Below, one piece after another: positions 5,887 to 57,443 of a stretch of 64,000 bases of DNA. The notes beneath the pieces were generated by a model. The model saw only the letters and a list, made by a program, of their open reading frames with translations, had not been told where the DNA came from and did no database searches. Where the stretch lies: IMG/VR virus record IMGVR_UViG_3300022935_000005, positions 216,914 to 280,913 of that record; one strand, 5' to 3'. A program made the position numbers and the translations under genes. The stretch's first letter is position 1. Each line of letters starts with the position of its first letter.

Positions 5887-5919
5887 AATCGTGCAAAACT
5901 AAACCACGCTTGATATAAT
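5887..5919 (+). promoter_or_regulatory. Repeated promoter, copy 1 (AATCGTGCAA-N17-TATAAT)
   Basis: AATCGTGCAA 5887-5896, TATAAT 5914-5919. Confidence 0.75.
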
Positions 5920-5952
5920 ACTTACATCATAGGATTAGAAACAGGAGAAAAA

Positions 5953-7890
5953 ATGGGAGCACTTGGCGGCCACATGGCTCATCTTCATGAGTCATTAGAA
6001 CTTACGTTTGATGAACTTTCGACTATTCTTGATAGTGTAGCAAACGCTGACATATCGGCGACTGAAAAGGTTGATGGTCAAAACCTGTTTTTGACAGTGA
6101 AGAGTGACGGGTCTATCAACACTGCCCGTAATGGCGGGGACCTAAAGAAGGGTGGAATGACTCCTAATGAGTTTGCTGCTAAGTGGAAGGGTCACCCCGC
6201 GGAGAGCGCTTTCACTAAGGGGTTCGAGGCAATCTCTCAAGCTATTAAATCCCTTGACCAGTCGACTTTAAATGACTTGTTTGCCAATGGGACGAGATAC
6301 GTTAATATGGAAGTCATGTACCCAGGCAATCCGAACATGATCGTGTATGATGCCGGCAACGTGGTACTTCATAACTTCCAAACGTTCGATTCTTCTGGCG
6401 CTCCCGTCGATGATCCAGACGCCCGCACCGCATTTCAACAGCTTGTTTCTGCTGTCGATGAAGCTGAGTCTGATGTCGATGGTGAAGCTTGGCTAGTGAA
6501 GGGTCCTGTAATCGCCCAGCTGCAGAGGCTAGCAGATGGGACAGCGCTCAAGGAAGTTCAAGCAGCGATCCAGAGGATTGCTTCGCCAGTGGGGATGTCT
6601 GCGACACTTGGGGATCTCGCAGAGTTGCGCTTGAGAGCCACGGCAATTCAGGCCGGTATACCAGAAAATAAGGTCGACCAGATGATGGACGCTGCGTTCG
6701 AGCGTGAGGGCGCTGCGTCTGTTAGGGACATCAAGAAAGGTTTGACGAAAGAACAGCAGGGCGTTGTTTCGAAGTTGGCAACTAAAGCCAACGCCAGGAA
6801 AGCGGTTGGTGCAGCCATGAAGCCGCTTGAATTAGCGATTACTGACTTTGCGATTGAAGTCCTCAGAGGGATGGAGAGCTACTTTGTTTCTGATACTGAT
6901 AAGGAATTGGCCCGACAACGGAATGAGCTTTCTAGGGCCATTGACTACCTCGAGGGACTAGCTACATCAGGTGACGAGGAGGTCGGTAAGATGGTCGACC
7001 GCCAGCTTGAGAAGTTGACTGACATCGAGAATCAGATTAATAGTACGATGGAGGGTATCGTCTTTGAATATCCACCTGGATCGGGAGAACTTAAGAAGCT
7101 TACCGGATCATTTGCGATGATGAATCAATTGGTTGGGAGAGCAAAGCGAGCAGGTATGCCTTCTGGTAGTGCGGTCGAGGAATCGTATGGTCGAGCTGCG
7201 TTCTCTTCTAGTGAATCAGCTTCGATTTACGACTTGATCTTGAATGAGCAAGCCTTCGTCGATAAGGGAAAGAGGGTCGGGTTGATTCCTGTCTCTGGAA
7301 AGCCGTATCACGCAGGACATCATTATCTTGTAGAGCAGGCAGCTGCCGATAATGACGAAGTTGTGCTTTTCGTTTCTACCTCTGATAGGAAAAGGAAAGG
7401 TGAAATGTCTATCTTGGGTGTAGACATGCTTCAAGTCTGGAAGCAAGAGCTAGAGAAGATTATGCCTACAAATGTCCGGGTAGAGTACGGAGGATCTCCT
7501 GTTCGTAAAGTCTATGACACCATTGGGAAAGCGTGTGAAGCGGGTGACGCTGAGGAAACCTACGTCATCTATTCAGATCCCACAGACACGATGCAGAACT
7601 ACCCGCAAGTGAATAGAGACAAATACATGCAGCCTATGTGTCGAATGGGACAAGTGGTTTTTGCGGCAGAAGAAGACCCGACAAGGTTTGAGAGAGGGGA
7701 GGGTTCACCAGATGTAAGCGGTACGAAAATGCGCGCCGCCATGGCAGCTGGAGATTTTGAAACCTTTGCAGCTGGTATGCCCGCAGGGGTTAACTCAAGA
7801 AATGTCTGGAGCATCTTGACTCACGATGAACCTTCTCCCACGTCGGAATCCAAGAAGTACTCTCTGGTATCAGCCCTTTACGGAAGTTAG
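5953..7890 (+). CDS. Two-domain protein: ligase-like KxDG N-terminal domain plus C-terminal HIGH-type nucleotidyltransferase
   Basis: MGALGGHMAH start, TEKVDGQN, C-terminal GKPYHAGH and VSGTKMR. Confidence 0.6.
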   Translation: MGALGGHMAHLHESLELTFDELSTILDSVANADISATEKVDGQNLFLTVKSDGSINTARNGGDLKKGGMTPNEFAAKWKGHPAESAFTKGFEAISQAIKSLDQSTLNDLFANGTRYVNMEVMYPGNPNMIVYDAGNVVLHNFQTFDSSGAPVDDPDARTAFQQLVSAVDEAESDVDGEAWLVKGPVIAQLQRLADGTALKEVQAAIQRIASPVGMSATLGDLAELRLRATAIQAGIPENKVDQMMDAAFEREGAASVRDIKKGLTKEQQGVVSKLATKANARKAVGAAMKPLELAITDFAIEVLRGMESYFVSDTDKELARQRNELSRAIDYLEGLATSGDEEVGKMVDRQLEKLTDIENQINSTMEGIVFEYPPGSGELKKLTGSFAMMNQLVGRAKRAGMPSGSAVEESYGRAAFSSSESASIYDLILNEQAFVDKGKRVGLIPVSGKPYHAGHHYLVEQAAADNDEVVLFVSTSDRKRKGEMSILGVDMLQVWKQELEKIMPTNVRVEYGGSPVRKVYDTIGKACEAGDAEETYVIYSDPTDTMQNYPQVNRDKYMQPMCRMGQVVFAAEEDPTRFERGEGSPDVSGTKMRAAMAAGDFETFAAGMPAGVNSRNVWSILTHDEPSPTSESKKYSLVSALYGS

Positions 7891-7954
7891 TGAACAAGCA
7901 CGGTTATTTTCTTATACTTGTTATGGCTTAAGCCGCAAGCAAAAGGAGAAAAAC

Positions 7955-8962
7955 TTGTTCCGTAAAGCCCTATCTTTTGACGACGTCTTACTCGTACCGA
8001 AGTATTCTGGCGTTCACTCACGTTCTGATATCGATCTCACTCTTGAGATTATGACAGACGAATCCATGAAGCTGCCGGTATTTGCAGCTCCAATGGATAC
8101 CATCATGAATGCAGAGATGGCTAGAGTTTTATTCGAAGCTGGAGCTCGCGGTGTTATGCATAGATACTGCAGTATCGAAGAGCAGGTCGCAGTTGTCAAG
8201 GAGGTAACTGATCAGGCTGAAATATTCGCTGCAGTAGGTATAACAGGAGATTATTATGATAGAGCAGGAGCCCTTATCGATGCAGGAGCTGTTGGGATTT
8301 GTGTGGACGTGGCTCATGGACATCACCGATCTGCAATTGATGCTATTCGAAACCTTAGTCGCACTTACAGAAATACTCATATAATGGCAGGCAACGTTGC
8401 CACCCTACGGGCTTTTGATGATTTAGCGGAAGCTGGAGCCAACTCTATCCGTGTTGGTGTCGGAGGTGGTTCCATCTGTAGTACCAGGATTATGACCGGT
8501 CACGGTGTACCGACATTACAGAGTGTTCTGGACTGCGCGTTGTCAGAGTCGGATGCTTTGCTTATCGCTGATGGTGGTATTAAGAACACTGGAGATATGG
8601 TGAAAGCGTTGGCTGCAGGTGCTGATGCAGTAATGGTTGGTAGAATGCTGGCTGGAACCACCGAGACCCCTGGACAGGTTATTGTTAACCCTGGAGAGAG
8701 GCCCACGAAAGTGTACAGGGGTATGGCAAGCCCGGAGGCTCAAGTTGCTTGGAGAGGTCGATATTCATCAAATGAAGGTGTAAGTAGGACTGTACCACTA
8801 AGAGGTTCTGCAAGAGCTGTGCTGTTTGAGATTGATAAGGGAATTCGTAGTGGTATATCTTATTCTGGAGCATTTTCTGTGAGAGAGCTACAGGCAAGGG
8901 CTGAGTTTATTGAGCAGTCTGCTGCTGGAGCTCGCGAGAGTTCGACGCATATTGACAACTAG
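7955..8962 (+). CDS. IMP dehydrogenase / GMP reductase family protein without CBS domains
   Basis: LSFDDVLLVP, APMDT, DVAHGH, GNVAT, VGVGGGSICSTR, ADGGI, YRGMAS; TTG start at 7955 after AGGAG. Confidence 0.9.
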   Translation: MFRKALSFDDVLLVPKYSGVHSRSDIDLTLEIMTDESMKLPVFAAPMDTIMNAEMARVLFEAGARGVMHRYCSIEEQVAVVKEVTDQAEIFAAVGITGDYYDRAGALIDAGAVGICVDVAHGHHRSAIDAIRNLSRTYRNTHIMAGNVATLRAFDDLAEAGANSIRVGVGGGSICSTRIMTGHGVPTLQSVLDCALSESDALLIADGGIKNTGDMVKALAAGADAVMVGRMLAGTTETPGQVIVNPGERPTKVYRGMASPEAQVAWRGRYSSNEGVSRTVPLRGSARAVLFEIDKGIRSGISYSGAFSVRELQARAEFIEQSAAGARESSTHIDN

Positions 8963-8986
8963 GGGATAATAAACCTCGTTAACTCA

Positions 8987-8993
8987 ATATTTA
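8987..8993 (+). promoter_or_regulatory. Putative late-promoter box ATATTTA
   Basis: Same heptamer at 5873-5879 (- strand), 21253, 30435, 40245 and 60848, each shortly before an ORF or ORF cluster. Confidence 0.5.
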
Positions 8994-9840: not shown

Positions 9841-11388
9841 ATGCCTTATAATAAAAGAAAGCAAAAGTGCACACAGTCAGACGGTGACAAAGGAAACTAT
9901 GTCCTTTCTTATACTGACAAGAAAGGGAAAAAGCACCGTGCCTGTCATACCAGTAAGAAGAACATGCAAGGTCAGATCGCTGCGATAGAAGCTGAAGCTG
10001 ACACGTCTGAATCTGACATGCTCGAAGAAATTAGAGCTTTAGTAAGAGAAGAGGTGATGAGGCTTGGGGGATCTTCAGCAGAGGTTGGTCCAATCAAGCA
10101 AGATATGGATCTTATGTCTGTAGCTAAGGATATGTTGGAAGCAGGCGACTCTGAAGGACTTGAGGATCTAGTTGACCTTAACAACGCTATCTATACTTCT
10201 ATCGATAAGCGGGACGCTTGGGAGTCTATTGGCGAACAGCTATTAACCGCTTGGGGCTTTGACGCTCCAGCTCAAGGTAAGAAGGCTGCTGCTGCTTCCG
10301 AGGGTGGTAGCGACGGCTCTGTCGCGACTTTTTGGGACGTGAGAAAAGAAGGTGTGCTATATTCTGTGAAGACGAGTTTTAAGACTCCAACGAAGCCGAC
10401 TAACTACAAGCAAGCAACTCAAAGCTCCAATATAAAGTTGTCAGCACTTTTTTCTGCAATAAAAGAAAATCCGCCAGGAACAAAGCTGGGAAATATTGGC
10501 TGTATTTACTCTGAGGAAGAAAACTCTCGTGTTATTGGGTGGGGAAACGTGACAGCACCAATATCGTCTGACGATCTTAGTCAAAAAATAAGGAGCATCA
10601 TCCAGAAAAATGTTGCCCCTGAAAATGTTGAAATCATTTTAAGCTCGTACGATTCTTTAGTGGGAACTGCTACTGGCAAAAAAATGTCTAAAGACGAGAC
10701 AGTTACAACAAAGCTTATCATTCGTGCACTCTCTTCAGCCGGACTATCGACCTCAGATGGAAGGCTTACAGGTAAGGCTGAACAATTTTTAGGCAGCTAC
10801 TCTGAAGGAACACCGATAGCATCTCTCGCTGTTTATGAACCGTCATATTTCTTTAAGGAGACGATGGGTAAATTAGGTGACGTTGATGATAACCAATTGT
10901 CTCTCTTTGATTTGCCAAAGGCAGATAAAGAATTTGCTTCTGACGGAGAAAGAAATGACGTTGTTAAGAGGCTTGGGACGCTAGCAAGAGGAATGTCTAC
11001 GACACAGCTTGACAAGCTATTGTCAGCAGCCAGAGAAATTATGAATGAGTCATTAATACGTGAGTACATTAGTGAGGCCACACTAATCAATGAAGAGTTA
11101 ACGGGCTCTGATAAGTCTGAAATCAAGCGGATGATAAAGAAAGAGATCGAAGGTGCCACCAACCGTAAAGAGATCGATAAGGCTTTTAAGAAAGCTTTCG
11201 ATTCAGAGCTCAAGAAATCCCTTAGCTCAAAGTCTGTTGTAGACGAGATCCAGAAAGAAGTTGAGAAGAGCATGGGCTCATCTGCGAACCGAGAAGTGGT
11301 GGTCCGGATTTGCAAAGACGTTTTAGTCAAGCTGTACAGAGAGCTTAGTTTCTCGTATAAGCCAGTTATTGACAGAATGAAAGTGTAA
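9841..11388 (+). CDS. Multi-domain hypothetical protein with possible PD-(D/E)xK-like central domain
   Basis: Basic N-terminus; central WESIGE...WDVRKEGVLYSVK; linkers IRALVREE and LIREYISEATLINEE. Confidence 0.5.
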   Translation: MPYNKRKQKCTQSDGDKGNYVLSYTDKKGKKHRACHTSKKNMQGQIAAIEAEADTSESDMLEEIRALVREEVMRLGGSSAEVGPIKQDMDLMSVAKDMLEAGDSEGLEDLVDLNNAIYTSIDKRDAWESIGEQLLTAWGFDAPAQGKKAAAASEGGSDGSVATFWDVRKEGVLYSVKTSFKTPTKPTNYKQATQSSNIKLSALFSAIKENPPGTKLGNIGCIYSEEENSRVIGWGNVTAPISSDDLSQKIRSIIQKNVAPENVEIILSSYDSLVGTATGKKMSKDETVTTKLIIRALSSAGLSTSDGRLTGKAEQFLGSYSEGTPIASLAVYEPSYFFKETMGKLGDVDDNQLSLFDLPKADKEFASDGERNDVVKRLGTLARGMSTTQLDKLLSAAREIMNESLIREYISEATLINEELTGSDKSEIKRMIKKEIEGATNRKEIDKAFKKAFDSELKKSLSSKSVVDEIQKEVEKSMGSSANREVVVRICKDVLVKLYRELSFSYKPVIDRMKV

Positions 11389-11417
11389 ACTATTTCTTCG
11401 TCTGCTATAATCTCTGT

Positions 11418-12359: not shown

Positions 12360-12363
12360 TAAG

Positions 12364-15423: not shown

Positions 15424-15487
15424 CTTTGTAAACTCCTCTTTCTAGAGTTATTATAGAAATAGTTCTAGCAATCAAATAGGAGAACTT

Positions 15488-15994: not shown

Positions 15995-17245
15995 GTGAGC
16001 GGAAAAAACAATAAGGAAGAAGAGACTTTATTTGTAAAGGGTAACTATGTTGCCGTAATGAATGGTAAGGTCGACGCTAGCGGTCTTGTATCAACCTCTG
16101 TGACAGTATGTACCATTTTGCACGTAGGCTGTGATGACGTGTTTGTGCAGTCTACATCCAGCCAGTTTTCTAATCCAGTAAGGTATATCGTTTCTAAACA
16201 AGCGTGCGTTCCTCTCTCCATAGATCCCGGGAATGTCGTTGGTTGTGTGCCTGCCCAGCCCTCAATCGGAGATATGGTTTTGTTTCATGATAAGCTGACG
16301 TGGTCGAGTAAAGAGCTTGAACTTATAGTTGGTACTGTATATGAAATATCTTTTATGAAGGGACGTCCGTCAACCGCGACTGTAATGAGAGGCACTGACA
16401 TGATCGAGCTACCGTACGCCAGTTTGCTGGTTTTACAGAAGGCACATTCGGTAGTGTAATTGTTCGACCAAACGCTTATAGTATAGCCATGAGCAAAGAA
16501 AGCAGCAAACCAACAAGTAAGAAAGCATCGGCACGGGGCGCACGTAAGTCTCTCGTCGCGGAATATAAGGCGAAAGCAAGGGGCAAAAAAACTTCTAGCG
16601 TTTCCTCAAAGAAAAGTGCCGATAAGAGTAAGCCAGTTCGACGAACGCCCACGAAGATTACATACAACCCTATCACGGAAATGGAAGTGGCCGGAGAAGT
16701 TTATCGCACCGGTGACATCGCACACTTCGTTTTAGAGGGCCGGATGGAGTCCAAGAAGCCTCACACCGGTGAGATCAAGGAATGTTATCCCAACGATCGG
16801 ATGGAGCCGAGCGTGGCAGTTTGGGACCAGACCGACGGCAAATACAGAACAATCAGAGCCAGATTGGTTGGATGGACAGCCACAGAAGCAAAGAAGAAAT
16901 GGCAGGAGTTCCTCGGTGACAACCCGGAAAAAGATTACTACTAATAAAGAGAGTGATGTGATTCAATCGTCACGCCGTAAGCGTGCCTCTAGAATCGACC
17001 CCCTCTCAGAGCACTGGTTCCACCCCAGAACCCCTTTCGCTCCCGGAGACATAGTTGCCATCAAGTGGGCAGATGATGCGCTTTCTCACCTCATGAATGA
17101 GGGTCCTCGGAGAACAGGAGTTGTCCTGACCGTGCTTGACGATACCACACCTGAGGGTGTTGAAGTCATGTGGGACTCGGGGGATATTGATTGGGATTAC
17201 GCCGATGACCTCCGACACGTTGAGGAGAGTCCACGACATGAGTAA
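15995..17245 (+). CDS. Three hypothetical ORFs (15995-16459, 16489-16944, about 16958-17245) with SH3/Tudor-like segments
   Basis: PSIGDMVLF, YRTGDIAHF and FAPGDIVAIKW motifs. Confidence 0.5.
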
Positions 17246-18068
17246 AGAGAGAAAACACATACTTCACATTCACGTTCCCAAGACAGGCGGGACTTGGTTC
17301 AACAGAGTCATGCACGAGCACCTGGGTACCGCATTTACTAGTGCCGATCACAACGCTGTCGAGTGGGCCGTCGAGGGCACGATGAAGGTCCCGTTCTGGA
17401 TCACAAGCGGAGCTGAGCACGTCGCTATAACGCTGCAAGGCATCGATGCCGAGGGTAACCGCGTCCCAAACCTCCTCCGCCCGGAGATTTACACGCGAGT
17501 CGGCATCTGCCGGAATCCGTTCGAGCTGCTTGTGAGTCACTGGAGCCACGACCACCCCGCTGACCGCGAGCGTGCCGCTCGCTGGGGCGCGCTGCCAGCC
17601 GGCCCGGTCGGTTGGGACTGCACCAACGCGGTTCACGGCATCTCAAGTTTTGACGGCTTCATCAAACGCCTGACAGATCCTGAGTTTCCCTGGGCTCACG
17701 CAACGTTGCAGCAGTCGCTGCACTACCAGTTACTGACGACAAAACGCCCACCCCGGGTCACTGTTGACTATGTGCTGAGGAACGAGCGGTTGACGGAGGC
17801 AACGCGAGAGCTCTTGGGCTTTCTGGGCATTGAACCCAATGAGACCACGCTCGCGAGCGATCGCGCCAGCAACAGCAGCCGCCACCGAGACTACCGGAGC
17901 TACTATACCGACGAGTTGCGCGAGCTTGTGGAGACCCACTATGCCCGAGACCTGGACACGCTTGGGTACGATTTTGACGGGTCAACGATCGACGCGGCGT
18001 GGTTTGCCATGGACCCTGCTGAAGAGCTGCCCGAGACCGCCATTGACACATATGTGTTAAAGGTGTAA
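17238..18068 (+). CDS. Sulfotransferase family 2 protein
   Basis: HIHVPKTGGTW (5'-PSB), RNPFELLVSHW (3'-PB), DYVLRNERL, YRSYYTDEL...DLDTLGYDF. Confidence 0.85.
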   Translation: MSKERKHILHIHVPKTGGTWFNRVMHEHLGTAFTSADHNAVEWAVEGTMKVPFWITSGAEHVAITLQGIDAEGNRVPNLLRPEIYTRVGICRNPFELLVSHWSHDHPADRERAARWGALPAGPVGWDCTNAVHGISSFDGFIKRLTDPEFPWAHATLQQSLHYQLLTTKRPPRVTVDYVLRNERLTEATRELLGFLGIEPNETTLASDRASNSSRHRDYRSYYTDELRELVETHYARDLDTLGYDFDGSTIDAAWFAMDPAEELPETAIDTYVLKV

Positions 18069-18077
18069 TTGCTCGAC

Positions 18078-18111
18078 AATCGTGCAAAGGTGCACCCACT
18101 TAGTGTATAAT
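18078..18111 (+). promoter_or_regulatory. Repeated promoter copy
   Basis: AATCGTGCAA-N18-TATAAT. Confidence 0.75.
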
Positions 18112-18115
18112 ATAG

Positions 18116-19015
18116 ATGTTGGTGGGGCTGATCCCCCAACACTGGAGAGTGCTCATGGACATCATCGTTACCGACAAGATCACCGCCGTCTGGGGCCGCG
18201 ATGTTACCGGCGTCAAGTACGTCCTCAACATCATTGAGACCGAAAACCTGACTCTGCCCCGCACCGCCGCCACCGGTCTCACCGGTGCCGACCTGGGCTG
18301 GACTGCCTACCCCACGGCGCGGGTGACCCTCGACCGTCGGGCGCGATGACGCGCTATGATGATACCACCGGGCCTGCGCCGGGCACGCTTGTCGCTAACT
18401 GCAACGAGTTCAGCGCTTGTTACGGGAGTGTTGGCCTTGTCATTGAGGAAAACCGGTCGACGCTCGCCGCTCTCGTTTACTTTTTTGTTGACCAGAAAAT
18501 GCGACCTGAACGCTGGGTGTACTGGCGACACTTGTGCGATGTGGAGGATGTAGATGACGCGCAACTCACTTGACTTTTTCTCTGGTCGATCACAGGATGG
18601 GTTTGACCGCTTTGATCCGGATCCCTATGTGACCCAAACCCGGGACCACTTCCTGGCGCTGGTCGGCGGCGAGTTTGATTACTACGGTGCTGACGGTGCC
18701 GAGCATGAGTTCAAGATTGACGGCATTGTCTTCAGGGTCCTTGAGGATCCCCAAGACGGGTACCGAAGCTGCCTGGGCGTGATCGAGTACAGCCCCGACC
18801 AGAGCCGCGGGATCTTCTTCACTCAACCTCTGGCGCGAGTCCGGCTGGAACAGTACGACTTGTACAAGGGCGATGACGTCTACAACGAGGCGTGTCAAGG
18901 GTACCGGTTGGTCGACGTTGATGACGCTCACGTCTGGCTTGAGTTCGGGACTGACAACTACAATGACTACTACCCGATATTCATCTTCCGGCACTGGGCA
19001 AAACCGCCGGCATAG
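18116..19015 (+). CDS. Three small hypothetical ORFs (about 18116-18349, 18346-18573, 18554-19015)
   Basis: Overlapping ORFs downstream of the promoter, G+C-rich codons. Confidence 0.5.
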
Positions 19016-19022
19016 TTTTGAA

Positions 19023-19056
19023 AATCGTGCAAAACGCACTCGCTCTATGGTATTAT
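19023..19056 (+). promoter_or_regulatory. Repeated promoter copy
   Basis: AATCGTGCAA-N18-TATTAT. Confidence 0.75.
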
Positions 19057-19535
19057 AATGATGTTGGTGGGGATTGGACCCCACTCACGAAACAAGAGGT
19101 GACAATGCGTTGCAACTACAATTGGGTTCAGGTTCGCCGGCGTGGCGAGTGGGTTGACAACGATGAGGGGTATAACTACCGTTACTGCCCGTGCTGCGCT
19201 CGGACCACCGAGCATGATCTCGACAAGTGCGTTCCCTGTGACGACCGGCGCGCCCGCGCCCGGCGGCGCTAGGGGGTGGTGATGAAGACTGCTGAGGTTC
19301 ACGTTTCTTTTGACGGCTCTGACTGGCGCAACCGGTTCACGATGCGGAGCCCGACAGGTCGTGTTGTCACTCTGCATTGCAACGGCAAGTGGAGCAAGAT
19401 GAGCCGGGAGCTGCGGCGCCTCGTCAATAAGTACCAGTTCGCAGACGCGGCAGACATTCCCTGGGGTAGTACACGGAAAGAAACTGTTACTTACGACGTG
19501 ATGGCTGAGATCCTGAGCCTCAGCAAGGTGTACTA

Positions 19536-25795: not shown

Positions 25796-25828
25796 AATCG
25801 TGCAATTGACTGCTCCCTGTGGTATAAT
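25796..25828 (+). promoter_or_regulatory. Repeated promoter copy
   Basis: AATCGTGCAA-N17-TATAAT. Confidence 0.75.
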
Positions 25829-25881
25829 AAGAATGTAAGAGGGTAGGGGAAATGGTTCCCCACCTAACCATAGGAGTCAAC

Positions 25882-28021: not shown

Positions 28022-28055
28022 AATCGTGCAAGCACAGGTCAAACTGTTGTATAAT
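28022..28055 (+). promoter_or_regulatory. Repeated promoter copy
   Basis: AATCGTGCAA-N18-TATAAT. Confidence 0.75.
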
Positions 28056-35464: not shown

Positions 35465-35498
35465 AATCGTGCAAAAGAGGTGCTTACTTTGTTATAAT
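35465..35498 (+). promoter_or_regulatory. Repeated promoter copy
   Basis: AATCGTGCAA-N18-TATAAT. Confidence 0.75.
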
Positions 35499-35850: not shown

Positions 35851-35884
35851 AATCGTGCAAAAGCTGGTTTGACTGTGGTATTAT
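35851..35884 (+). promoter_or_regulatory. Repeated promoter copy
   Basis: AATCGTGCAA-N18-TATTAT. Confidence 0.75.
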
Positions 35885-35933
35885 ATAAATGAAGGTGGGG
35901 AAGGAATAAAGACCCCCACTAAGGAGAGACACC

Positions 35934-38482
35934 ATGCTAGCAAAGCCCAAACTTTTCGGACCCCTCATTGGCGACCGCGTTCGGTCCTTTGACTTCCACG
36001 GCAACAAGGATCTTGATGGCGAACGAGCCTGCTACATGGAAGGCCAGATCACTGGGCTCGAGCAGATTGAGGGTTGCTGGCGGTACAAAATTGAGGTCCG
36101 CAAGTCGATTTTTGGGGGAATGGAAGTGAGTGACTTTCCATCGGTCATCTTTCCACCGGTCAACGGAACTCCTCGATTGTTCGGTGGAGAATGCAACGGC
36201 GTGGAGGTCATCTAATGAATGCTGTAACAGTTCCAGCCACAAAGAGGAATCTTCCTTCTTGGCGTACGATTGCCAACGCCTATCGCGATGGCCTGAAACA
36301 GGTCTTCGGATGCGGTTGTGATGACGTCGATGACTATCTCATCAAGGCGCTGAAGAGTGATGTCCACAAGGCAGACAGAGCCCCGGGACAGTGGTCGCCC
36401 AACTCGATCCTCGAAATCTACTGCGAGAACGGAATCCCTAACGCGACTGACATTAACGAGTTCCGTTGGGAAGGGAAGTGGCACTGCTCTTACAACAGTG
36501 AGAAGTGGTGCAAAGTCGATGATTATGTTAATCAGACACTAGCGCTCAAAGGGTATCGTGAGCGTGTTTATCACGAACCCTACAACAGCGCAGTTGTCAA
36601 CATTGGGTGGAGCTGAAAATGCTGGTACAACGTCGTTCAATCCTTACTGGTGTGGTCCGGGCTCGCGAGCTGGACATTACAGAAGAGCAGCTCAACGCTT
36701 GGCAGAATGGTGCTCTGATTCAGGATGTCATGCCGAATCTCTCGGTTTCTGACCGGGAGTTTCTCATCAACGGCGTCACTGATGAAGAGTGGGCTGCAAC
36801 CTTCGGAGATGATGCATGAAGATTGGTGATCTGGTGAAGATGTCTGGAGGGGATGATCCAGGCGTGGGCTTGATACTAGAAGAACCGGTGCCTTGTGGGC
36901 CTCATGGCAACCGTGAACGTGTCAAGCTTCTGTGGCTCGACTGTGATGAAGTTTGTTTTGAACGCGTAGACTGGCTGGAGATCGTTAATGAAAGTCGGTG
37001 ATGTGATAAAGCTCAAAGGGTCTTTCAAAGAAACCCGGGTTGGTGTGTTGGTTAGTGAGACAAAGGGAAACTGGAACGGCTGGTGGAATATTCTGGACTC
37101 TGACGGCTTGATGGTGATGTGGCCCGAGACGATGATCGAGGTGCTTAATGCAGATCGGTGACTTGGTGACGGTGGAAAAGAAGGTTGGGATTGTAGATGA
37201 AGGTATTATCGTCGGCATCGAGAACTCCGGTAACTGCTTCAAGGCTTTTGAAGTGCTCTGTTTTGGAACAGGAAAGGTCTGTTCCGCCCACCCCCTTGAC
37301 GTAAAGAAGATGACAGGAGAAAAAAAATGACTCGTAAAGATTTTGCAGATGCGCTCCGGCGACACGACTGGTATTACGCTTACAGCGATGACCACCGCTA
37401 CTGGACCCGCGGACGAGATGAGGCCGCAGCTCTTAACGCAAGCCACTCTGCGCTTGAGTGCCCTTTTGACATGGCTACTCTACGTAAGTGGGCTCATGAT
37501 ATGGTCGTTGACCACTTCGCTGAGGAGGAACCCGGCAATTGGTATCGCCAACCACGATTGTACAAGTGCGTTGCCCCAACTCCCCGCGCCGATTTGATCA
37601 CGAACGAAGAACACAACAACATTTCACGATGGATGGAAGAATAAATGACTGAGAATGAACTTGATCGTCTACTAGCGATGCTGAACCCCGCATGTGATGA
37701 TACCACAGTAGAGTTCGTAAAAGAGCGATTGATCAATGCAGGAGCTGTTAGGCGCCCACGCTCGATGAGTGAAGCGCAGACAATCAATCCTTTTGAAAGA
37801 CCGCCTGCAAACGATCCAGTGGAGTGGTAATGGCCCGTACGATTCGAATGTCTGCTCAAGACCGAGCAGATCTGCAAAAGATCTTGGATGAAGGGAAGAA
37901 CCCAGTTGGTGGAGGATCGTGCAGGATCTCCGCCACGAAGCTTGTCAGGAACAACGGCATTCTGTTCGTCGATGGCGAACGCCAAGAGTCCGTGGGACTA
38001 CGAGAAGCAAAGTACGCTGTCGACAAGATGCTAATTGACCAAAATCACCCATCAGCACCAAGAGAATCTCCGCCTACGCAAGTGAGTATTTTCCCGATGC
38101 TGCAGATCAAAAGCATCACTGTCGATACCGGAGCTGGTTGCGTCGAGCTAGATATTGACGGCTTGCAACTTAAGCTACTCGAGGGGATGGATACTATCCC
38201 GCTTGATATTCTTGCACCATCTACTCAGCTGATTCAATACATTCGAGATTGGCATGAGGGTAAAGTGTAAAAGGAGTTGTAATGCGTAACATGAGGTCAG
38301 AGTACTATGAAGGTCTAGCAGCCGTTGTTTTCATGGTTGCAGCTTGTATTGTCTGGTATTTCGCATATGTCAAACCGAACGATGAAGCGCGCGGAGAGAT
38401 TGTAAAGTGTATGCGTGCAACGGACGACATGAGCTTCGAGAACTGGCAAAAGTGTAGTAAAGAGCTTGATGCTCTTAGATAA
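35934..38482 (+). CDS. Operon of about 10 small hypothetical ORFs, including three KxGD barrel-like ORFs (36816-37001, 36988-37161, 37148-37330)
   Basis: Contiguous coupled ORFs 35934, 36215, 36607, 36816, 36988, 37148, 37327, 37645, 37824, 38282. Confidence 0.6.
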
Positions 38483-38514
38483 TCGTGCAAGAGGCCTCCC
38501 TCCTTTGATATAAT
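38481..38514 (+). promoter_or_regulatory. Repeated promoter copy
   Basis: AATCGTGCAA-N18-TATAAT. Confidence 0.75.
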
Positions 38515-42971: not shown

Positions 42972-43052
42972 TAGTTATTTTTGATATACCTGCAAACTCG
43001 TGCAGAATTGTATATAATAGTACTATAAGAAAGGGTTGACTTAGGAGTTAAC

Positions 43053-50884: not shown

Positions 50885-50917
50885 AATCGTGCAAACGACT
50901 CCCTGGCGTGGTACTAT
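50885..50917 (+). promoter_or_regulatory. Repeated promoter copy
   Basis: AATCGTGCAA-N17-TACTAT. Confidence 0.7.
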
Positions 50918-51161
50918 AAAAATATAAAGGATAGCAACCACAAGGAAGGAGGTCAAAGATGACCAAGAAGATCAAAGTTGGAGATAGAGTTTACTACAGA
51001 GCTCCCCGGTTGGCAGATCGTAAGAAGGGCTCAAAGCCAGAATTCACAGTGGTAGAACTTTACGACGGTGGTACGATGGCTAATGTCAAACATGACGACG
51101 GTTATATCTTCACTGGCTACATCGTAGACCGAATGACTAAATACGAAGGATAGGTGTCAGT

Positions 51162-52331: not shown

Positions 52332-54440
52332 ATGACCAACAGAAGACTAGCAGCTTCATTTTTCTTTCTTGCTGCTATCGGGTGCTCAGAAGATCAAGTC
52401 TCTCAGATGACCGTCGACTCTGGTGTAAGGACTATCACTCAAGATGACAGCAGTGCTGCAGATGTAATGATAGTCACAGTTCAAGACGCCTCTATAGATA
52501 TGTTCATTGATCCATGTCTCGACATCCAGAACACCGATGATATGTACTGTGAGTGTCACCCCAGATGCTGTCAAAATCAAACATGGTACTGCCCTCCTAG
52601 AGGTACTGAAGTTTTGGCAAAAGATGCTGTCTTAGACATCTGCGATACTGACTATGTACCGTGTGATAGAAACATTGATGAATCATGTCCTCCGGCAGAA
52701 ATTATCTACGAAAGTTCTTGTAACCATATGTTTGACTGTCCACCGGGCATAGACGAAGACTTTACAGTTTTCTATGATTGTGAGGTGGATGGTAACCCGG
52801 GCACTCAGAGGGTGCGTTGTGACAAGGGAAGGTTAGACTATGGACAGTGCGTCGTTTGTGTCTTGGCGGACGAGATCTGTGACGGCCAAGATAATGACTG
52901 CGATGGCGAAATAGACGAACACCAATTGAATGAATGTGGTCAATGTGGATTGTTACCCCAAGATGCTTGTGATGGGCTCGATAACGACTGCGATGGTCTT
53001 GTTGATGAAGATCTGGTTCAAGCATGTGTCACTACATGTGAGCGTGGTGTAGAGGTTTGTGAAAACGGAGCCTGGGTGGGTTGTACAGCAAGACAGCCAT
53101 CCGAAGAAATCTGCGACGGCTTCGATAATGACTGCGACGGTTTGATTGATGAAGAGCTTAATTGCGGATGCCCACCTGAGATGGTCGGCGCGTTGCTACC
53201 CTGTATGGAACCACCACTAACTTGTGGGATGGGATTCAAGACGTGCGAGTGTGAAGATGAAGACTGCTTGACAACTCGAATGTCTGACTGCTTCGCTTTG
53301 TGCGCTTGGTTACCGGCAGAGATAGTCCAGCATGATGAGCCAGACACTTGTGACAGATACGCAGGAATGCCTGTTAATCCAGAAGTTTGTAATAACTTCG
53401 ACGAAGACTGTGACGGTTTAATCGATGAGAGACTAAACAAGCCTTGCTATTCTGGTCCTCAAGATACTATAGGGGTAGGTGTGTGTCGAGGTGGTAGTCA
53501 AGTCTGCGAACAAGGTCGCTGGTACGGAGAAACAACAGCCGGCAGTTTTGTTCACGATTTTTGTGCAGGTGAGATCGTACCCAGCAGAGAGATTTGCGAC
53601 GGTAGTGATAATGACTGCGATGGTGTTACCGACTTTGGTCGAGAGATTCCAGACACAGACATTCTTTTCATTCTTGATTGGTCTGGATCTATGGCATACC
53701 AGATCAACGCTGTAAAGATGGCGATGAATAGATTTGCAAACCATTTCGCTGCAGAGGGTAAGTTAAAATGGGGATTAATAACCGGACCTCGGATTTTTCC
53801 AAGAGAAGGTCAAGATCCTTCACAGGCTAAACAATACCTGAGGTTAGAAACTGACATAACATCATTCTCAGATTTTATCGCTGCATTCTCTGCAGCTGGT
53901 GCTTTTGAGACTGGAGCAACCCATGAAATGTTAATTGACGCGCTGCTGCTTTCTGTCGCGACTATTTCATCTAACATGACTTATGACCTGTCAACCGCAC
54001 AGTGGTTCAATGGTTTCTCTGACGCCGGATCGATTCCGAGTCTACAAGACTTTCGAATAAACTGGCGACATAACGCTGACAGGGTTATCGTAGTGTTTAC
54101 AGACGAGGAGGATCAGTCTTTCCTCGTACCGAAAGTGACTAGCGAACAAGCTATAGCAGCCCTCGAGGGATCACCAGATACTACACTTTATGTGTTCACA
54201 CAAAGATACTTTTTTTCGAGGTGGGACGATTATGTAGACCCGACAGGTGGAAGACTGTTCCCATTATCTTCTAACTCTGAGCAGATGTATGATGATCTCA
54301 TGTCTATACTCGATGAGATCTGCCTTAACGCAGGCTCTTCTGTACAGATGGAAGAAGCTTCGTATAATGGTAATATGTCAAGCCAGCTATACAATCCAGT
54401 GATTTCAAGATATAATTTTTCTGGTGGCTATTGCTACTAA
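52332..54440 (+). CDS. Cys-rich lipoprotein with repeated E.CDG.DNDCDG..DE (putative metal-binding/MopE-like) motifs and C-terminal VWA domain
   Basis: Lipobox AAIGC; five CD/NxxDxDCDG units; DILFILDWSGSM, VIVVFTDEEDQS. Confidence 0.85.
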   Translation: MTNRRLAASFFFLAAIGCSEDQVSQMTVDSGVRTITQDDSSAADVMIVTVQDASIDMFIDPCLDIQNTDDMYCECHPRCCQNQTWYCPPRGTEVLAKDAVLDICDTDYVPCDRNIDESCPPAEIIYESSCNHMFDCPPGIDEDFTVFYDCEVDGNPGTQRVRCDKGRLDYGQCVVCVLADEICDGQDNDCDGEIDEHQLNECGQCGLLPQDACDGLDNDCDGLVDEDLVQACVTTCERGVEVCENGAWVGCTARQPSEEICDGFDNDCDGLIDEELNCGCPPEMVGALLPCMEPPLTCGMGFKTCECEDEDCLTTRMSDCFALCAWLPAEIVQHDEPDTCDRYAGMPVNPEVCNNFDEDCDGLIDERLNKPCYSGPQDTIGVGVCRGGSQVCEQGRWYGETTAGSFVHDFCAGEIVPSREICDGSDNDCDGVTDFGREIPDTDILFILDWSGSMAYQINAVKMAMNRFANHFAAEGKLKWGLITGPRIFPREGQDPSQAKQYLRLETDITSFSDFIAAFSAAGAFETGATHEMLIDALLLSVATISSNMTYDLSTAQWFNGFSDAGSIPSLQDFRINWRHNADRVIVVFTDEEDQSFLVPKVTSEQAIAALEGSPDTTLYVFTQRYFFSRWDDYVDPTGGRLFPLSSNSEQMYDDLMSILDEICLNAGSSVQMEEASYNGNMSSQLYNPVISRYNFSGGYCY

Positions 54441-54450
54441 TGGGGAAGCC

Positions 54451-54837
54451 ATGAGCTTTAATCTAAGAGAAACTAAGATATTTGTTGCGCTCGCTTCAGT
54501 ATTTATGTTATGCTACGCGGCTTTACTTATAAAGGGCGCCAACAGGTTCGAGGCTCATTCTGCGACGTCACAATCTGCTGCTGAGGTTGAGTATGCAAGG
54601 ACAGCGGCCCAAGAAGGAATGAGCGAGTTTATCTCTATCCACCTCTCCAATGAACCAATAGAAAGCGGTGTTTTGATTCCAGAAACGCAGTTGAGACATG
54701 GCTCGTCTTATGAAGTAGAAATCCAGCATAATGAGGCTGGTAACATCGTTGTCACGAGTAGAGGGAAATACAAGAGTTCGAATGATATAATCTATGAGTA
54801 TCCTATACGGGCAGTCCTCAGCCCCAAAAGTGACTAA
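54451..54837 (+). CDS. Second PilX-like protein
   Basis: TM segment, then ARTAAQEG; YEV, V.SRGKYK and YP.RAV shared with 45873. Confidence 0.6.
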   Translation: MSFNLRETKIFVALASVFMLCYAALLIKGANRFEAHSATSQSAAEVEYARTAAQEGMSEFISIHLSNEPIESGVLIPETQLRHGSSYEVEIQHNEAGNIVVTSRGKYKSSNDIIYEYPIRAVLSPKSD

Positions 54838-56212: not shown

Positions 56213-56883
56213 ACAGCTCGTATAATAGTGGGTAAAAGAACTTGAAGATTGGTGATTATGTCGGTCTATACGCGAGCTCGCCTTCCTCTGATACCGAGGA
56301 TTCGCCTCTTGGTGTCGTCATCGGATTTAACGAAACTGGAGAGGGCGGGAGACACTTCGTACACGTCTTGACAGATGCGGGCATCGAGATATTTTCAGCT
56401 TGGAACCTTTACGTTATCACAGACCATGAAGAAGATTGAAAGTGAAGATAAGATGGAAGACGATTGGGAAGATAAAGAGCTTGAGGTGTCCGACGAAGAG
56501 TGGTATCCTGTGACCCTACAATTTGAGATCCCGGGTACCGGTGAATTTCACCGCATTGACATTCTAGACAAAGATGAAGAAGAGGCTGCGTTAGCTTGGA
56601 TGTATGAACAGTGCGGAGAAGACTTTGAAGACTACGAATGGCGATGAGATCAAGCTCGGAAGCATCGTTAAAGCCAATGGTCATGTATCTGGCTCTACGA
56701 AAGTGTGGGACATAAAGTACCGGTCTGGTATCGTTATTGAACTACACACTCCGAAATGGGACTCGGTATATACATCGCTTCCTTCTGCTACTGTATTGTG
56801 GGAAGACGGAAAGACAAATGTTCTGTGGGTTCAAGACCTTGAACTAGTTGAAGAAGCTGACAACTAGTAACAAAAAAATTTAA

Positions 56884-56917
56884 AATCGTGCAAACCTACC
56901 AACAAGTATGGTACTAT
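56884..56917 (+). promoter_or_regulatory. Repeated promoter copy
   Basis: AATCGTGCAA-N18-TACTAT. Confidence 0.7.
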
Positions 56918-57132
56918 GAATCATAAAGAAACAAAGGACTTGGAGGTAAAAATAAGTGAGGAGTACTGATTATGTCTAACATACCTGCATTCATTTTGTT
57001 ATGTCTCTTTTCTGTTGGAGCCAACCTATATGTTGTCTATAAGTTGTTCGAGATAGAAGATTATCTCAAAAGGCGAGACAGGGATGACCCTCAAAATGCA
57101 CCAACAGAGAAAGTTGCGATTAGGAGAGCCCG

Positions 57133-57408
57133 ATGAAATCCAGCACCTTGATTCTGGTTCTGGGTTTTCTCGCTGGGTGTGGCGATCATATGGAGCTATC
57201 TGTAGATGAAGACTGTTCACCGCAGCATGAAGAGTATACGCATTCTGTACTGTACTGTAACAACCAGCTGAGCACTATCGCTGTCGTCTGCGATCCATCT
57301 GAAGAACTTCCACAAGAGCAGTGCTCGACCTCAGAAGACTTGCTTACTGATAATTGCGAGCTGGTGTCTGTCTGCTGCATCGATTATGAGTGTAGGACGA
57401 ATTACTGA
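57133..57408 (+). CDS. Small Cys-rich lipoprotein
   Basis: LGFLAGC lipobox; several Cys residues. Confidence 0.6.
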   Translation: MKSSTLILVLGFLAGCGDHMELSVDEDCSPQHEEYTHSVLYCNNQLSTIAVVCDPSEELPQEQCSTSEDLLTDNCELVSVCCIDYECRTNY

Positions 57409-57409
57409 T

Positions 57410-57443
57410 AATCGTGTAACCAGAACATTGACTGTTGTATAAT
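57410..57443 (+). promoter_or_regulatory. Repeated promoter copy (variant)
   Basis: AATCGTGTAA-N18-TATAAT. Confidence 0.7.

What the first reader, a model, noticed from the sequence alone, without database searches (positions are those of the whole stretch)
5887..57443. Eleven copies of a conserved promoter AATCGTG(C/T)AA-N17/18-TA(T/C)(A/T)AT
Seen at 5887, 18078, 19023, 25796, 28022, 35465, 35851, 38481, 50885, 56884 and 57410, always intergenic or at a gene end, + strand, and mostly heading clusters of small ORFs. Looser (T/C)TG(T/C)AA-N17/18 variants occur at 15426, 42990 and 61410. Inference: a sigma70-like early promoter with an atypical -35 (GTGCAA) and an AATC extension, possibly read with a phage factor. 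The repeats could also act as recombination anchors, as mobile early-promoter cassettes do in T4-type phages.
Basis: partly seen in the sequence, partly recalled or inferred. Interest (0 to 1): 0.6.

Follow-up and report, generated by a model that had tools for sequence, protein, structure and literature searches.

The report
Repeated phage promoters, unusual -35 box
Eleven copies in the window (about twenty in the genome) of one sigma-70-type promoter head the small-gene region of an uncultured 281-kb marine T4-like phage. Their unusual -35 box turns up only in relatives that carry a sigma factor split into two genes, and that split factor probably reads it.

Summary
All 11 AATCGTG(C/T)AA-N17/18-TA(T/C)(A/T)AT sites exist, all on the + strand, against 0.24 expected by chance. 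The window is the last 64 kb of a 280,913-bp metagenomic gp23-type jumbo phage. Genome-wide there are 15 exact and about 20 clear sites, all on the coding strand. They cluster at 180 kb through the contig end to 6 kb, and each lies 15-55 nt before a Shine-Dalgarno sequence and start codon. Eight of the 11 have an extended -10 (TGn), about half have an A-rich upstream tract, and about half of the predicted transcripts begin with a hairpin.

Relatives keep the element. The invariant core is TGYAA, 17-19 bp from TATAAT; the AATC extension is lineage-specific.

The phage also encodes a sigma-70 homologue that stops after region 4.1, and a separate 104-aa protein with four conserved cysteines plus a region 4.2 helix-turn-helix. 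Two base-contacting residues in that helix are changed. TGYAA promoters were found only in records that carry these genes. A sigma-less relative uses canonical TTGACA.

Best reading (0.45): the detached 4.2 protein reads the box. Main rival (0.37): host sigma-70 reads it alone. No transcription start data could be obtained. Promoter-led gene cassettes are reshuffled among relatives, but the one junction I inspected lies outside the box.

The parts
5887..5919 (+). Class-A promoter: box 5887-5896, 17-bp spacer, -10 TATAAT 5914-5919, extended -10 TGA. First ORF 5953-7890 (645 aa, nucleotidyltransferase-like C-terminus). No 5' hairpin.
18078..18141 (+). Class-A promoter: box 18078-18087, -10 at 18106-18111. 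Includes a 5' hairpin at 18117-18141 (-15.2 kcal/mol). First ORF 18155-18349 (64 aa).
19023..19088 (+). Class-A promoter: -10 TATTAT at 19051-19056, extended -10 TGG. Includes a 5' hairpin at 19063-19088 (-13.8 kcal/mol). First ORF 19105-19272 (55 aa). Its homologue in relative L237 is also promoter-led, but in a different neighbourhood.
25796..25865 (+). Class-A promoter: 17-bp spacer, -10 at 25823-25828. Includes a 5' hairpin at 25841-25865 (-14.3 kcal/mol). First ORF ends at 26697 (about 270-281 aa, no Pfam family).
28022..28055 (+). Class-A promoter: -10 at 28050-28055, preceded by TTG rather than TGn. Followed by small ORFs from 28079 and 28150.
35465..35498 (+). Class-A promoter: TTGAC directly before the box, -10 at 35493-35498. 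Weak hairpin at 35512-35531. First ORF 35550-35828 (92 aa).
35851..35920 (+). Class-A promoter: -10 TATTAT at 35879-35884. Includes a 5' hairpin at 35894-35920 (-11.5 kcal/mol). First ORF 35934-36215 (93 aa). Assembly graphs of RNA-library runs fork here, onto the copies at genome 3373 and 6334.
38481..38514 (+). Class-A promoter before a 56-aa ORF (38539-38709) and the UvdE endonuclease gene (38876-39814).
50885..50917 (+). Class-A promoter: 17-bp spacer, -10 TACTAT. First ORF 50959-51153 (64 aa).
56884..56917 (+). Class-A promoter: -10 TACTAT, A-rich tract upstream. First ORF 56972-57136 (54 aa).
57410..57443 (+). Class-A promoter with the box variant AATCGTGTAA. First ORF 57465-57647 (60 aa).
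11383..11411 (+). Weaker member: GTGTAA-N17-TATAAT (genome 228296), without the AATC extension.
15426..15454 (+).
42986..43018 (+). It is the 21st site in the matrix scan (score 16.0). The homologous gene in relative L237 is also promoter-led.
61410..61439 (+).

Best explanation
These are real transcription promoters of the sigma-70 type. They are organised as expression cassettes with up to six parts, which no single copy carries in full: an A-rich upstream tract (about half of the copies), a box at the -35 position, an extended -10 (8 of the 11 window copies), TATAAT, a transcript that often begins with a hairpin (about half), and a Shine-Dalgarno sequence with start codon. About 20 copies drive the variable, small-gene part of an uncultured T4-like jumbo phage, and also its tRNA cluster and its own sigma gene.

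The -10 (TATAAT) is read by region 2 of a sigma-70-family protein. The box at -35 (family core TGYAA, here AATCGTGCAA) is most likely not read by the host sigma. I propose it is read by a phage protein I call sigma-C. Sigma-C is 104 aa long and has four conserved cysteines followed by a sigma region 4.2 helix-turn-helix. It is the piece that is missing from the phage's truncated sigma, which I call sigma-N and which has regions 1.2, 2, 3 and 4.1 only. Together they would form a sigma factor split between regions 4.1 and 4.2.

Sigma-C has its own conserved, canonical-looking promoter (TTGAAA-N18-TAAAAT), so host polymerase could make it first. Host sigma-70 could fire the class-A promoters weakly through their extended -10, including the one before the sigma-N gene. 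The phage pair would then take over in a positive feedback loop.

The 5' hairpin most likely protects the mRNA 5' end from degradation.

Shown here: the motif statistics, geometry, conservation, the gene split and the co-occurrence. Inferred: who binds the box, the timing, and the role of the hairpin.
For: Promoter nature:
- 11 of 11 window sites and 22 versus 0 genome sites lie on the coding strand, with a fixed 17/18-bp spacing to TAYWAT.
- A Shine-Dalgarno sequence and start codon follow within 15-55 nt.
- Box and -10 are conserved while spacers differ, both in this genome and in relatives.

Split sigma:
- Sigma-N (genome 184883-185641) matches Pfam regions 1.2, 2 and 3, and only the first half of region 4.
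- Sigma-N aligns to E. coli RpoD residues 101-126 and 374-565 and then ends.
- About 120 homologues of roughly 250 aa end at the same place.
- Sigma-C (genome 27776-28090, - strand) aligns to RpoD 572-599 at 61% identity, with E585 changed to M and R588 changed to C.
- Its recognition helix TRMRICQIEK and four cysteines are invariant in 22 homologues.
- All 57 PDB hits of its family profile are region 4.2 of primary sigma factors.

Co-occurrence of the two genes:
- 7 of 8 large records chosen for sigma-C also have sigma-N.
- All 4 sigma-N-chosen records that are at least 76% complete have sigma-C.
- All 5 records that are at least 90% complete and have either gene have both.

Link to the box:
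- TGYAA-type promoters are strongly strand-biased in 12 sigma-carrying records: G000 22/0, G002 22/0, G009 15/0, G011 25/0, G019 55/0, G015 8/0, G021 7/0, G017 16/0, G016 7/0, G010 9/3, G020 7/2, G027 4/0.
- They sit at background level (0-2) in 7 sigma-less records.
- One of those, G001, is 98% complete and its capsid protein is 68% identical over the C-terminal half. It and similar AT-rich contigs use TTGACA-N16/17-TATAAT instead.
- G000 has no TTGACA-N16-18-TAYWAT on either strand.

Cascade:
- Sigma-C is always a lone, reverse-oriented gene.
- It has TTGAAA-N18-TAAAAT or TACAAT upstream in 5 of 8 relatives, and GTGAAA-N18-TAAAAT in a sixth; the spacers are not conserved.
- The sigma-N gene lies behind a class-A promoter in G000, G002, G009 and the relatives L069 and L070.

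Hairpin:
- Folding energy just after the -10 is lower than in shuffles for G000 (p = 8e-4) and G009 (p = 6e-4).
- The arm sequences differ between lineages while the pairing is kept.
Against: - There are no transcription start or timing data. The RNA-library runs that hold the phage are available only as contigs and may contain DNA.
- No binding evidence exists.
- The co-occurrence is confounded by ancestry and by host. The sigma-carrying phages form a clade, and G001 is AT-rich and probably has a different host.
- T4-type phages without such a sigma already use lineage-specific -35 variants that host sigma-70 reads. Examples are TTTACW in T4/PST and TTGYVH in KVP40/nt-1, the latter overlapping TGYAA (PMC4122927).
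- TTGAAA, TTGTAA and GTGCAA all share TG..AA, so a single reader could serve them all.
- If the promoters strictly needed the phage pair, the sigma-N gene behind its own promoter class would have a start-up problem.
- Nine sigma-carrying records showed no clear motif with my two exact patterns (G012-G014, G018, G022-G026).
- Sigma-N lacks the two residues that contact the extended -10 TG in E. coli (H455 and E458 are S and A by my reading).
Confidence: 0.45

Rival explanations
1. These are ordinary early promoters read by unmodified host sigma-70 holoenzyme alone. The box is a lineage-specific variant of the -35 hexamer (TG and the final A are kept). The extended -10 and an A-rich UP-like tract make up for it, as in T4-type early promoters. 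Strong conservation reflects selection for very strong promoters. The phage sigma pair serves some other promoter set, or simply shares the -10.
For: - The sites head clusters of small ORFs with no known family, which is typical of early or hyperplastic regions; 9 of 10 tested had no Pfam hit.
- 8 of the 11 window sites have TGn before the -10.
- A-rich tracts lie upstream in about half of the sites.
- T4/PST early promoters use TTTACW and KVP40/nt-1 use TTGYVH with host sigma-70 (PMC4122927).
- The sigma-N gene is itself behind such a promoter, which needs a reader that exists before sigma-N does.
- Looser TTGTAA and CTGCAA variants grade towards the canonical hexamer.
Against: - GTGCAA matches TTGACA at only 3 of 6 positions.
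- There is not one TTGACA-N16-18-TAYWAT in 281 kb.
- The 10-nt box is invariant in 14 of 15 exact copies, and the TGYAA core is kept across relatives whose sigma proteins are only about 50% identical.
- The box is absent from all seven sigma-less records, including the capsid-similar G001, which uses TTGACA.
- No other abundant two-part promoter motif was found for the sigma pair to read.
Confidence: 0.37
2. The promoters are extended -10 promoters that need no -35 element. The conserved upstream box is then the operator of a regulator, either a phage or host repressor or activator, that switches the whole set on or off together. The second phage protein with a region 4.2-like helix (334 aa, genome 175157-176161) is one candidate.
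For: - The box is far more conserved than a -35 hexamer needs to be, and in this lineage it extends to about 13-14 nt (GAC-AATCGTGCAA-a).
- Most sites have TGn.
- A second phage protein carries a sigma region 4.2-like helix-turn-helix.
Against: - The core kept across lineages is only TGYAA, at a fixed 17-19 bp from the -10. That is the geometry of a -35 element, not of an independent operator.
- The box has no dyad symmetry.
- The extension varies by lineage.
Confidence: 0.1
3. The repeats matter mainly as recombination sites, that is, as mobile promoter cassettes like the PeSLs of T4-type phages. On this view their sequence identity is maintained by copying between sites rather than by protein recognition.
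For: - Promoter-led genes homologous to those at genome 259899, 2478 and 235936 lie side by side in relative L237.
- One relative lacks the three cassettes at genome 675-3316.
- The repeats are long enough to fork assembly graphs.
Against: - Spacers between box and -10 are not conserved, so the identity is in blocks and functional, not the result of copying.
- The one junction resolved lies about 55 nt upstream of the box, at a TCTA microhomology.
- Upstream terminator hairpins are absent: one clear case (before genome 786) and two marginal hits, all 130 nt or more upstream, among 21 sites.
- Strict orientation and distance to start codons point to expression as the primary role.
Confidence: 0.05

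Closest known systems
Early promoters and PeSL cassettes of T4-type phages (RB49/phi1, T4/PST, KVP40/nt-1; Arbiol 2010 PMC2839356, Comeau 2014 PMC4122927)
   Same: Many near-identical sigma-70-type promoters lie in the hyperplastic small-gene regions of a gp23-type myovirus. The -35 variant is lineage-specific, upstream sequence is A-rich, and a Shine-Dalgarno sequence and start codon follow closely. Neighbouring genes are gained, lost and reshuffled between relatives.
   Different: There is no stem-loop terminator directly upstream of the promoter. Instead a hairpin lies downstream, at the transcript's 5' end. The -35 core is TGYAA with a non-T first base. The phage also carries its own sigma-70 homologue. 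A crossover inside the repeat was not demonstrated.
T4 middle promoters (sigma appropriation by AsiA and MotA)
   Same: A normal -10 is combined with a phage-specific upstream box that replaces the host -35 and is read by a phage protein placed where sigma region 4 normally sits.
   Different: The box sits at the true -35 position (17-19 bp from the -10), not at -30 with 11-13 bp spacing. Its sequence is unrelated to TGCTT. No AsiA homologue was found. The candidate reader is itself a copy of sigma region 4.2 rather than a MotA-type protein.
Two-subunit (split) sigma factors: T4 gp55/gp33, SPO1 gp33/gp34, B. subtilis SigO-RsoA, Tn916 Sig7-Sig8 (bioRxiv 10.64898/2026.10.01.756105)
   Same: Promoter recognition is divided between two small proteins encoded by separate genes. 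As with Tn916 Psig7, a sigma gene sits behind its own promoter class, which gives positive feedback.
   Different: Known cases separate a region 2 protein from a region 4 protein. Here a primary-like sigma (regions 1.2, 2, 3 and 4.1) is cut between 4.1 and 4.2. The 4.2 piece is fused to a module with four conserved cysteines and is encoded about 157 kb away on the opposite strand. Function is untested.
Extended -10 promoters and sigma-70 lacking region 4.2 (established E. coli work, from my own knowledge)
   Same: Most sites carry TGn before TATAAT, the feature that lets holoenzyme work without -35 contacts.
   Different: A strongly conserved element is nevertheless present at -35. Sigma-N also lacks the E. 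coli residues that contact TG.
5'-terminal stem-loops that stabilise mRNA (for example the ompA leader; from my own knowledge)
   Same: The hairpin begins within a few nucleotides of the predicted 5' end and is followed by an unpaired Shine-Dalgarno sequence.
   Different: It is present in only about half of the cassettes. Its 5' arm is part of the conserved promoter-proximal block. No stability data exist, and it matches no Rfam family.

Membership tests
Sigma-70-type (-10/-35) promoter | A -10 hexamer close to TATAAT | tested here: met
   TATAAT, TATTAT or TACTAT in 11 of 11 window sites and in all 20 genome sites
Sigma-70-type (-10/-35) promoter | A second element 17 +/- 1 bp upstream of the -10 | tested here: met
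   The spacer is 17 bp (3 sites) or 18 bp (8 sites) in the window. It is 17 bp in G002 and G009, and 18 bp after TGTAAA in G017
Sigma-70-type (-10/-35) promoter | A -35 hexamer close to TTGACA | tested here: not met
   GTGCAA matches at 3 of 6 positions. There is no TTGACA-N16-18-TAYWAT anywhere in the genome
Sigma-70-type (-10/-35) promoter | Transcription starts about 7 nt downstream of the -10 | not testable with these tools
   RNA-library runs are held only as contigs and show no 5' ends
PeSL (promoter-early stem-loop) cassette | A stem-loop terminator immediately upstream of the promoter | tested here: not met
   One convincing terminator (130 nt before genome 786) and two marginal hairpin hits, all 130 nt or more upstream, among 21 sites; none immediately upstream. 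The definition comes from PMC4122927
PeSL (promoter-early stem-loop) cassette | Location in hyperplastic regions, next to genes that differ between close relatives | tested here: met
   Cassettes are reshuffled in L237, and three cassettes are absent from contig 3300017744_005557. Downstream ORFs mostly have no known family
PeSL (promoter-early stem-loop) cassette | Recombination occurs within the repeat itself | tested here: inconclusive
   The one junction resolved lies about 55 nt upstream of the box. Other pairs are too diverged for base-level mapping
T4 MotA-dependent middle promoter | A MotA box (TGCTT) centred at -30, plus AsiA and MotA genes | tested here: not met
   The box has a different sequence and position. 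There is no AsiA match in the genome. MotA was not searched for
Split (two-subunit) sigma factor | Two separate genes that together cover the promoter-recognition regions of one sigma | tested here: met
   Sigma-N aligns to RpoD 101-126 and 374-565. Sigma-C aligns to RpoD 572-599
Split (two-subunit) sigma factor | The two genes are conserved and occur together | tested here: met
   14 records carry both genes. All 5 records that are at least 90% complete and have either gene have both. The misses are in records 44-73% complete
Split (two-subunit) sigma factor | Both proteins bind RNA polymerase and are required at the cognate promoter | not testable with these tools
Sigma-70 region 4 (Pfam PF04545), applied to sigma-C | A score above the curated cut-off | tested here: met
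   31.4 bits against a cut-off of 24.1, on profile positions 19-46 only. The precomputed PF04545 hit appears in all 59 homologue clusters

The most novel reading that the evidence does not exclude
A widespread, uncultured lineage of marine and estuarine T4-like jumbo phages carries a primary-type sigma factor that is naturally cut between regions 4.1 and 4.2. The detached 4.2 module is fused to a domain with four conserved cysteines, is encoded far away on the opposite strand, and is probably made first by host polymerase. On this reading it recognises a private -35 element (TGYAA). The phage's roughly 20-55 promoter cassettes would then be invisible or weak to host sigma and switched on as a set by the phage pair. 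That would be a one-protein equivalent of T4's AsiA/MotA sigma appropriation, and a new way of splitting a sigma factor.
Probability: 0.4. Interest if true: 0.8.

Novelty: new variant of a known kind. Interest (0 to 1): 0.62.

Why it matters
Repeated strong promoters in the variable regions of T4-like phages are well known, so the motif alone would be a new member of a known kind. The new element is the link to a sigma factor that appears to be split in an undescribed place, between regions 4.1 and 4.2, in a lineage with hundreds of metagenomic relatives and no cultured member.

If the detached 4.2 protein reads the TGYAA box, two things follow. It would give a simple natural example of modular -35 recognition in trans. 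It would also show how a phage can build a private promoter code on host core polymerase.

The idea is directly testable with three small proteins and a 60-bp DNA fragment. The promoter model also gives a practical tool for annotating transcription units and cassette boundaries in these uncultured genomes.

Tried and rejected
- **Nucleotide search of deposited phages** with 12 kb of the window found nothing. The genome has no close deposited relative.
- **Transcript evidence.** Six RNA-library runs hold the phage, but only as contigs. The contigs tile the region, break at the promoter repeat, and show neither starts nor strand. This is no evidence either way.
This says nothing about binding.
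- **AlphaFold2 on sigma-C** gave pLDDT 56. Only the helix-turn-helix (residues 65-100) was moderately confident, so I ran no fold search.
- **Base-level mapping of cassette boundaries** against relatives mostly failed because of divergence.
- **Rfam** found no family in the window.
- **AsiA** was not found.
- **Canonical TTGACA/TATAAT matches** with up to one mismatch each are equally common on both strands (21 and 19), so they are background. The exception is the one directly upstream of sigma-C.
- **T4 late promoter TATAAATA** is not enriched (3 on each strand).
- **Host identification** through the PEPCK gene gave only about 55% identity to many Alphaproteobacteria, which is too distant to name a host.
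- **A first genome-wide terminator script** timed out. I replaced it with a local scan.
- **The exact-pattern scan of IMG/VR** returned mostly single chance hits. Only multi-hit contigs were informative.

Full report
**1. The observation**

AATCGTGYAA occurs 11 times in the window, at exactly the coordinates given. All copies are on the + strand, against a mean of 0.24 in shuffles. All 11 carry TAYWAT 17 or 18 bp downstream, where the expected number for the full pattern is 0.00.

**2. Genome context**

The window is the last 64 kb (216914-280913) of a single 280,913-bp contig with 45% G+C.

- The genome encodes a gp23-type major capsid protein, a portal protein, two tail-sheath paralogues, a DnaE-type polymerase and ribonucleotide reductase.
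- Nearly all genes are on the + strand.
- The capsid protein's best deposited relatives are Microcystis phage Mel-JY01 (36%), Flavobacterium phages and Rhodothermus RM378.
- The genome itself is known only from JGI and ENA metagenomes.
- Salt-marsh, estuary, marine and freshwater runs hold it.
- IMG/VR classes the record as linear and 92% complete.
- A related contig bridges genome position 280853 to position 190, so the contig end and start are contiguous.

**3. The full set of sites**

There are 15 exact copies genome-wide. A two-block weight matrix gives 20 clear sites: scores of 24.6 or more, against 16.0 for the next best. This adds variants ATTCGTGCAA, AAGCGTGCAA and AAGCGTGTAA at genome 786, 2478, 6334, 180705 and 212773. 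None lies on the - strand. All sites fall between 180.7 kb and 6.3 kb, going through the contig end.

- Each site is followed within 15-55 nt by a Shine-Dalgarno sequence and start codon. The exception is 212773, which precedes the tRNA cluster.
- One copy (184795) lies 88 nt before a sigma-factor gene.
- Downstream ORFs are mostly small. Nine of 10 tested had no Pfam family.

**4. Anatomy of the element**

Aligned, the conserved blocks read tt-GAC-AATCGTGCAA-a, then a variable spacer, then cTGTGG-TATAAT-ataaATGTTGGTGGGG.

- Eight of the 11 window sites have TGn before the -10.
- About half have an A-rich tract upstream.
- About half of the predicted transcripts begin with a hairpin, 5' arm GGTGGGG and 3' arm CCCCACC.
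- Folding energy just after the -10 is lower than in shuffles for G000 (p = 8e-4) and for relative G009 (p = 6e-4). It is marginal for G002 (p = 0.05).
- In G002 the hairpin arms have a different sequence (GGAAGGAAAGG and CCTTTCCTCC) but still pair.
- Terminator-like hairpins upstream are essentially absent: one clear case and two marginal hits, all 130 nt or more upstream, among 21 sites.
- Rfam has no match in the window.

**5. Conservation in relatives**

An exact-pattern scan of IMG/VR, followed by tblastx, found diverged relatives that carry the same box, the same -10 and a similar hairpin, but different spacers.

- In deeper relatives (capsid 65-66% identical) the AATC extension is gone. 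The core (c)GTGCAA-a remains, 17 bp from TATAAT. G002 has 22 on its coding strand and 0 on the other; G009 has 15 and 0.
- Other lineages use GTGTAA (G011 25/0, G019 55/0).
- Others use gattCTGTAAAA (G017 16/0, G016 7/0) or TTGTAAA (G010 9/3, G020 7/2).

The invariant core is therefore TGYAA. The first base and the upstream extension are lineage-specific.

**6. A split sigma factor**

*Sigma-N.* The genome encodes a 252-aa sigma-70-family protein, which I call sigma-N (genome 184883-185641).

- It has regions 1.2, 2 and 3, and only the first half of region 4.
- It aligns to E. coli RpoD residues 101-126 and 374-565 and then ends.
- About 120 listed homologues of roughly 250 aa end at the same point.

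*Sigma-C.* A separate 104-aa protein, which I call sigma-C, is encoded at genome 27776-28090 on the - strand.

- It aligns to RpoD 572-599 at 61% identity.
- Two residues differ that contact -35 bases in E. coli according to established work, which I cite from my own knowledge: E585 is M and R588 is C.
- In 22 homologues the helix TRMRICQIEK and four cysteines are invariant.
- All 57 PDB matches of the family profile are region 4.2 of primary sigma factors.

*Other related genes.* A third protein (334 aa, genome 175157-176161) has a weaker 4.2-like helix. A gp55-like late sigma is also present. No AsiA was found.

*Prior knowledge.* Iyer et al. 2021 (PMC7824862) noted that gp23-type jumbo phages carry both 'minimal single-HTH' and RpoD-like sigmas. 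They did not describe the two as complementary halves. No deposited phage has a sigma-C homologue.

**7. Co-occurrence**

IMG/VR holds 221 sigma-C loci and 293 sigma-N loci.

- Of 8 large records chosen for sigma-C, 7 have sigma-N.
- Of 10 chosen for sigma-N, 5 have sigma-C, including all 4 that are at least 76% complete.
- All 5 records that are at least 90% complete and have either gene have both.
- TGYAA-type promoters are strongly strand-biased in 12 sigma-carrying records.
- They are at background (0-2, no strand bias) in 7 sigma-less records.
- One sigma-less record, G001, is 98% complete, and its capsid protein is 68% identical over the C-terminal half. It and similar AT-rich contigs use TTGACA-N16/17-TATAAT.
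- G000 has no TTGACA-N16-18-TAYWAT at all.

**8. A possible cascade**

Sigma-C is always a lone, reverse-oriented gene between a PhoH-like and an Hc1-like gene.

- Its upstream region carries TTGAAA-N18-TAAAAT or TACAAT in 5 of 8 relatives, and GTGAAA-N18-TAAAAT in a sixth. The spacers are not conserved.
- Part of the -35 there overlaps the complement of the neighbouring gene's ribosome-binding site, which weakens this point.
- The sigma-N gene lies behind a class-A promoter in every lineage I looked at.
- This resembles the positive feedback of the Tn916 split sigma.

**9. Interpretation**

That these are promoters is supported by every indirect test, but start sites could not be obtained. 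Who reads the box is open.

- I favour the detached 4.2 protein (0.45). The reasons are the exact complementarity of the two genes, the changed base-contacting residues, the parallel invariance of the recognition helix and the box core, the co-occurrence, and the lack of any other two-part motif for the pair to read.
- The main rival is host sigma-70 alone (0.37). T4/PST and KVP40/nt-1 early promoters already use non-canonical -35 variants (TTTACW and TTGYVH) with host sigma. The co-occurrence is confounded by ancestry and host. The sigma-N gene also needs a reader that exists before sigma-N is made.
- A mixed course is plausible: host sigma first, through the extended -10, and the phage pair later.

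**10. Recombination**

- In relative L237, three promoter-led genes homologous to those at genome 259899, 2478 and 235936 lie side by side.
- Another relative lacks genome 675-3316, which holds three cassettes.
- The junction of that indel lies at a TCTA microhomology, just after a terminator and about 55 nt upstream of the box at 3373. It is not inside the repeat.
- Other junctions were too diverged to map.

So cassettes move as promoter-plus-gene units. That the repeats are the crossover sites is not shown. The defining upstream stem-loop of PeSLs is also missing.

**11. Verdict**

The finding is a new variant of a known kind: a phage promoter family whose -35 box is tied to a candidate sigma factor split between regions 4.1 and 4.2.

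Noticed in passing
outside the window: genome 184883-185641 (+) and 27776-28090 (-); loci L010:4883-5641 and L132:1459-1773: A sigma-70 homologue ends after region 4.1. A separate 104-aa protein with four conserved cysteines carries the missing region 4.2 helix-turn-helix. Together they look like a split sigma factor. The pair is conserved and co-occurs in many uncultured jumbo phages, and is absent from deposited phages.
   Followed up: yes
window 21253, 40245, 55506, 58158; genome-wide 29 on + and 7 on -: The motif ATAYTTAA is strand-biased and mostly intergenic. It lies 12-60 nt before start codons, mainly of structural and replication genes. It is a candidate late promoter for the gp55-like sigma (genome about 54037-54771), in place of T4's TATAAATA. 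Some copies sit only 12 nt from the ATG, which would give nearly leaderless mRNAs.
   Followed up: partly
window 1-1110 (gene at genome 216551-218023): The phage encodes an ATP-dependent phosphoenolpyruvate carboxykinase, an unusual auxiliary metabolic gene. The best cellular matches are about 55% identical, across many Alphaproteobacteria.
   Followed up: partly
window 5953-8962: A 645-aa protein with a cytidylyl/adenylyl-transferase-like C-terminus is followed by an IMP dehydrogenase/GMP reductase family gene (378 aa, 313 bits). Both lie behind the promoter at 5887.
   Followed up: no
window 16001-20000: A G+C-rich island (54.5%, against 42-49% elsewhere) contains a 310-aa ORF (17136-18068) and two of the promoters. 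It may be a recent acquisition.
   Followed up: no
window 52332-54440: A 702-aa protein carries MopE-like putative metal-binding repeats (PF11617, 63 bits).
   Followed up: no
window 3948-5846 (-) and 29407-30369 (-): These are two of the few minus-strand genes. The first is tail-fibre-like, with a concanavalin/laminin-G domain, and starts back-to-back with the promoter at 5887.
   Followed up: no
genome 210284-215396 (L011:10284-15396), just upstream of the window: A cluster of seven tRNA genes (Met x2, Asn, Glu, Leu, Gln, Thr). Six of them lie behind the class-A variant promoter at genome 212773, which also has the 5' hairpin; the first tRNA-Met (210284) lies upstream of it.
   Followed up: partly
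genome 175157-176161 (L009:15157-16161): A 334-aa protein has a second, weaker sigma region 4.2-like helix-turn-helix (25.9 bits). It is preceded by CATATTTAG, which resembles the candidate late promoter. It could be another partner for the truncated sigma, or a gp33-like factor.
   Followed up: partly
window 35873-35902: Contigs of four RNA-library runs end or fork exactly at the conserved -10/hairpin block and continue into the copies at genome 3373 and 6334. The repeats exceed the assembler's word length and will fragment assemblies of such phages.
   Followed up: partly
loci L302, L312-L316 and genome about 27500-29500: Sigma-C is always flanked by a PhoH-like ATPase gene and a small Hc1 (histone H1-like, PF07432) gene, both in the opposite orientation.
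   Followed up: no
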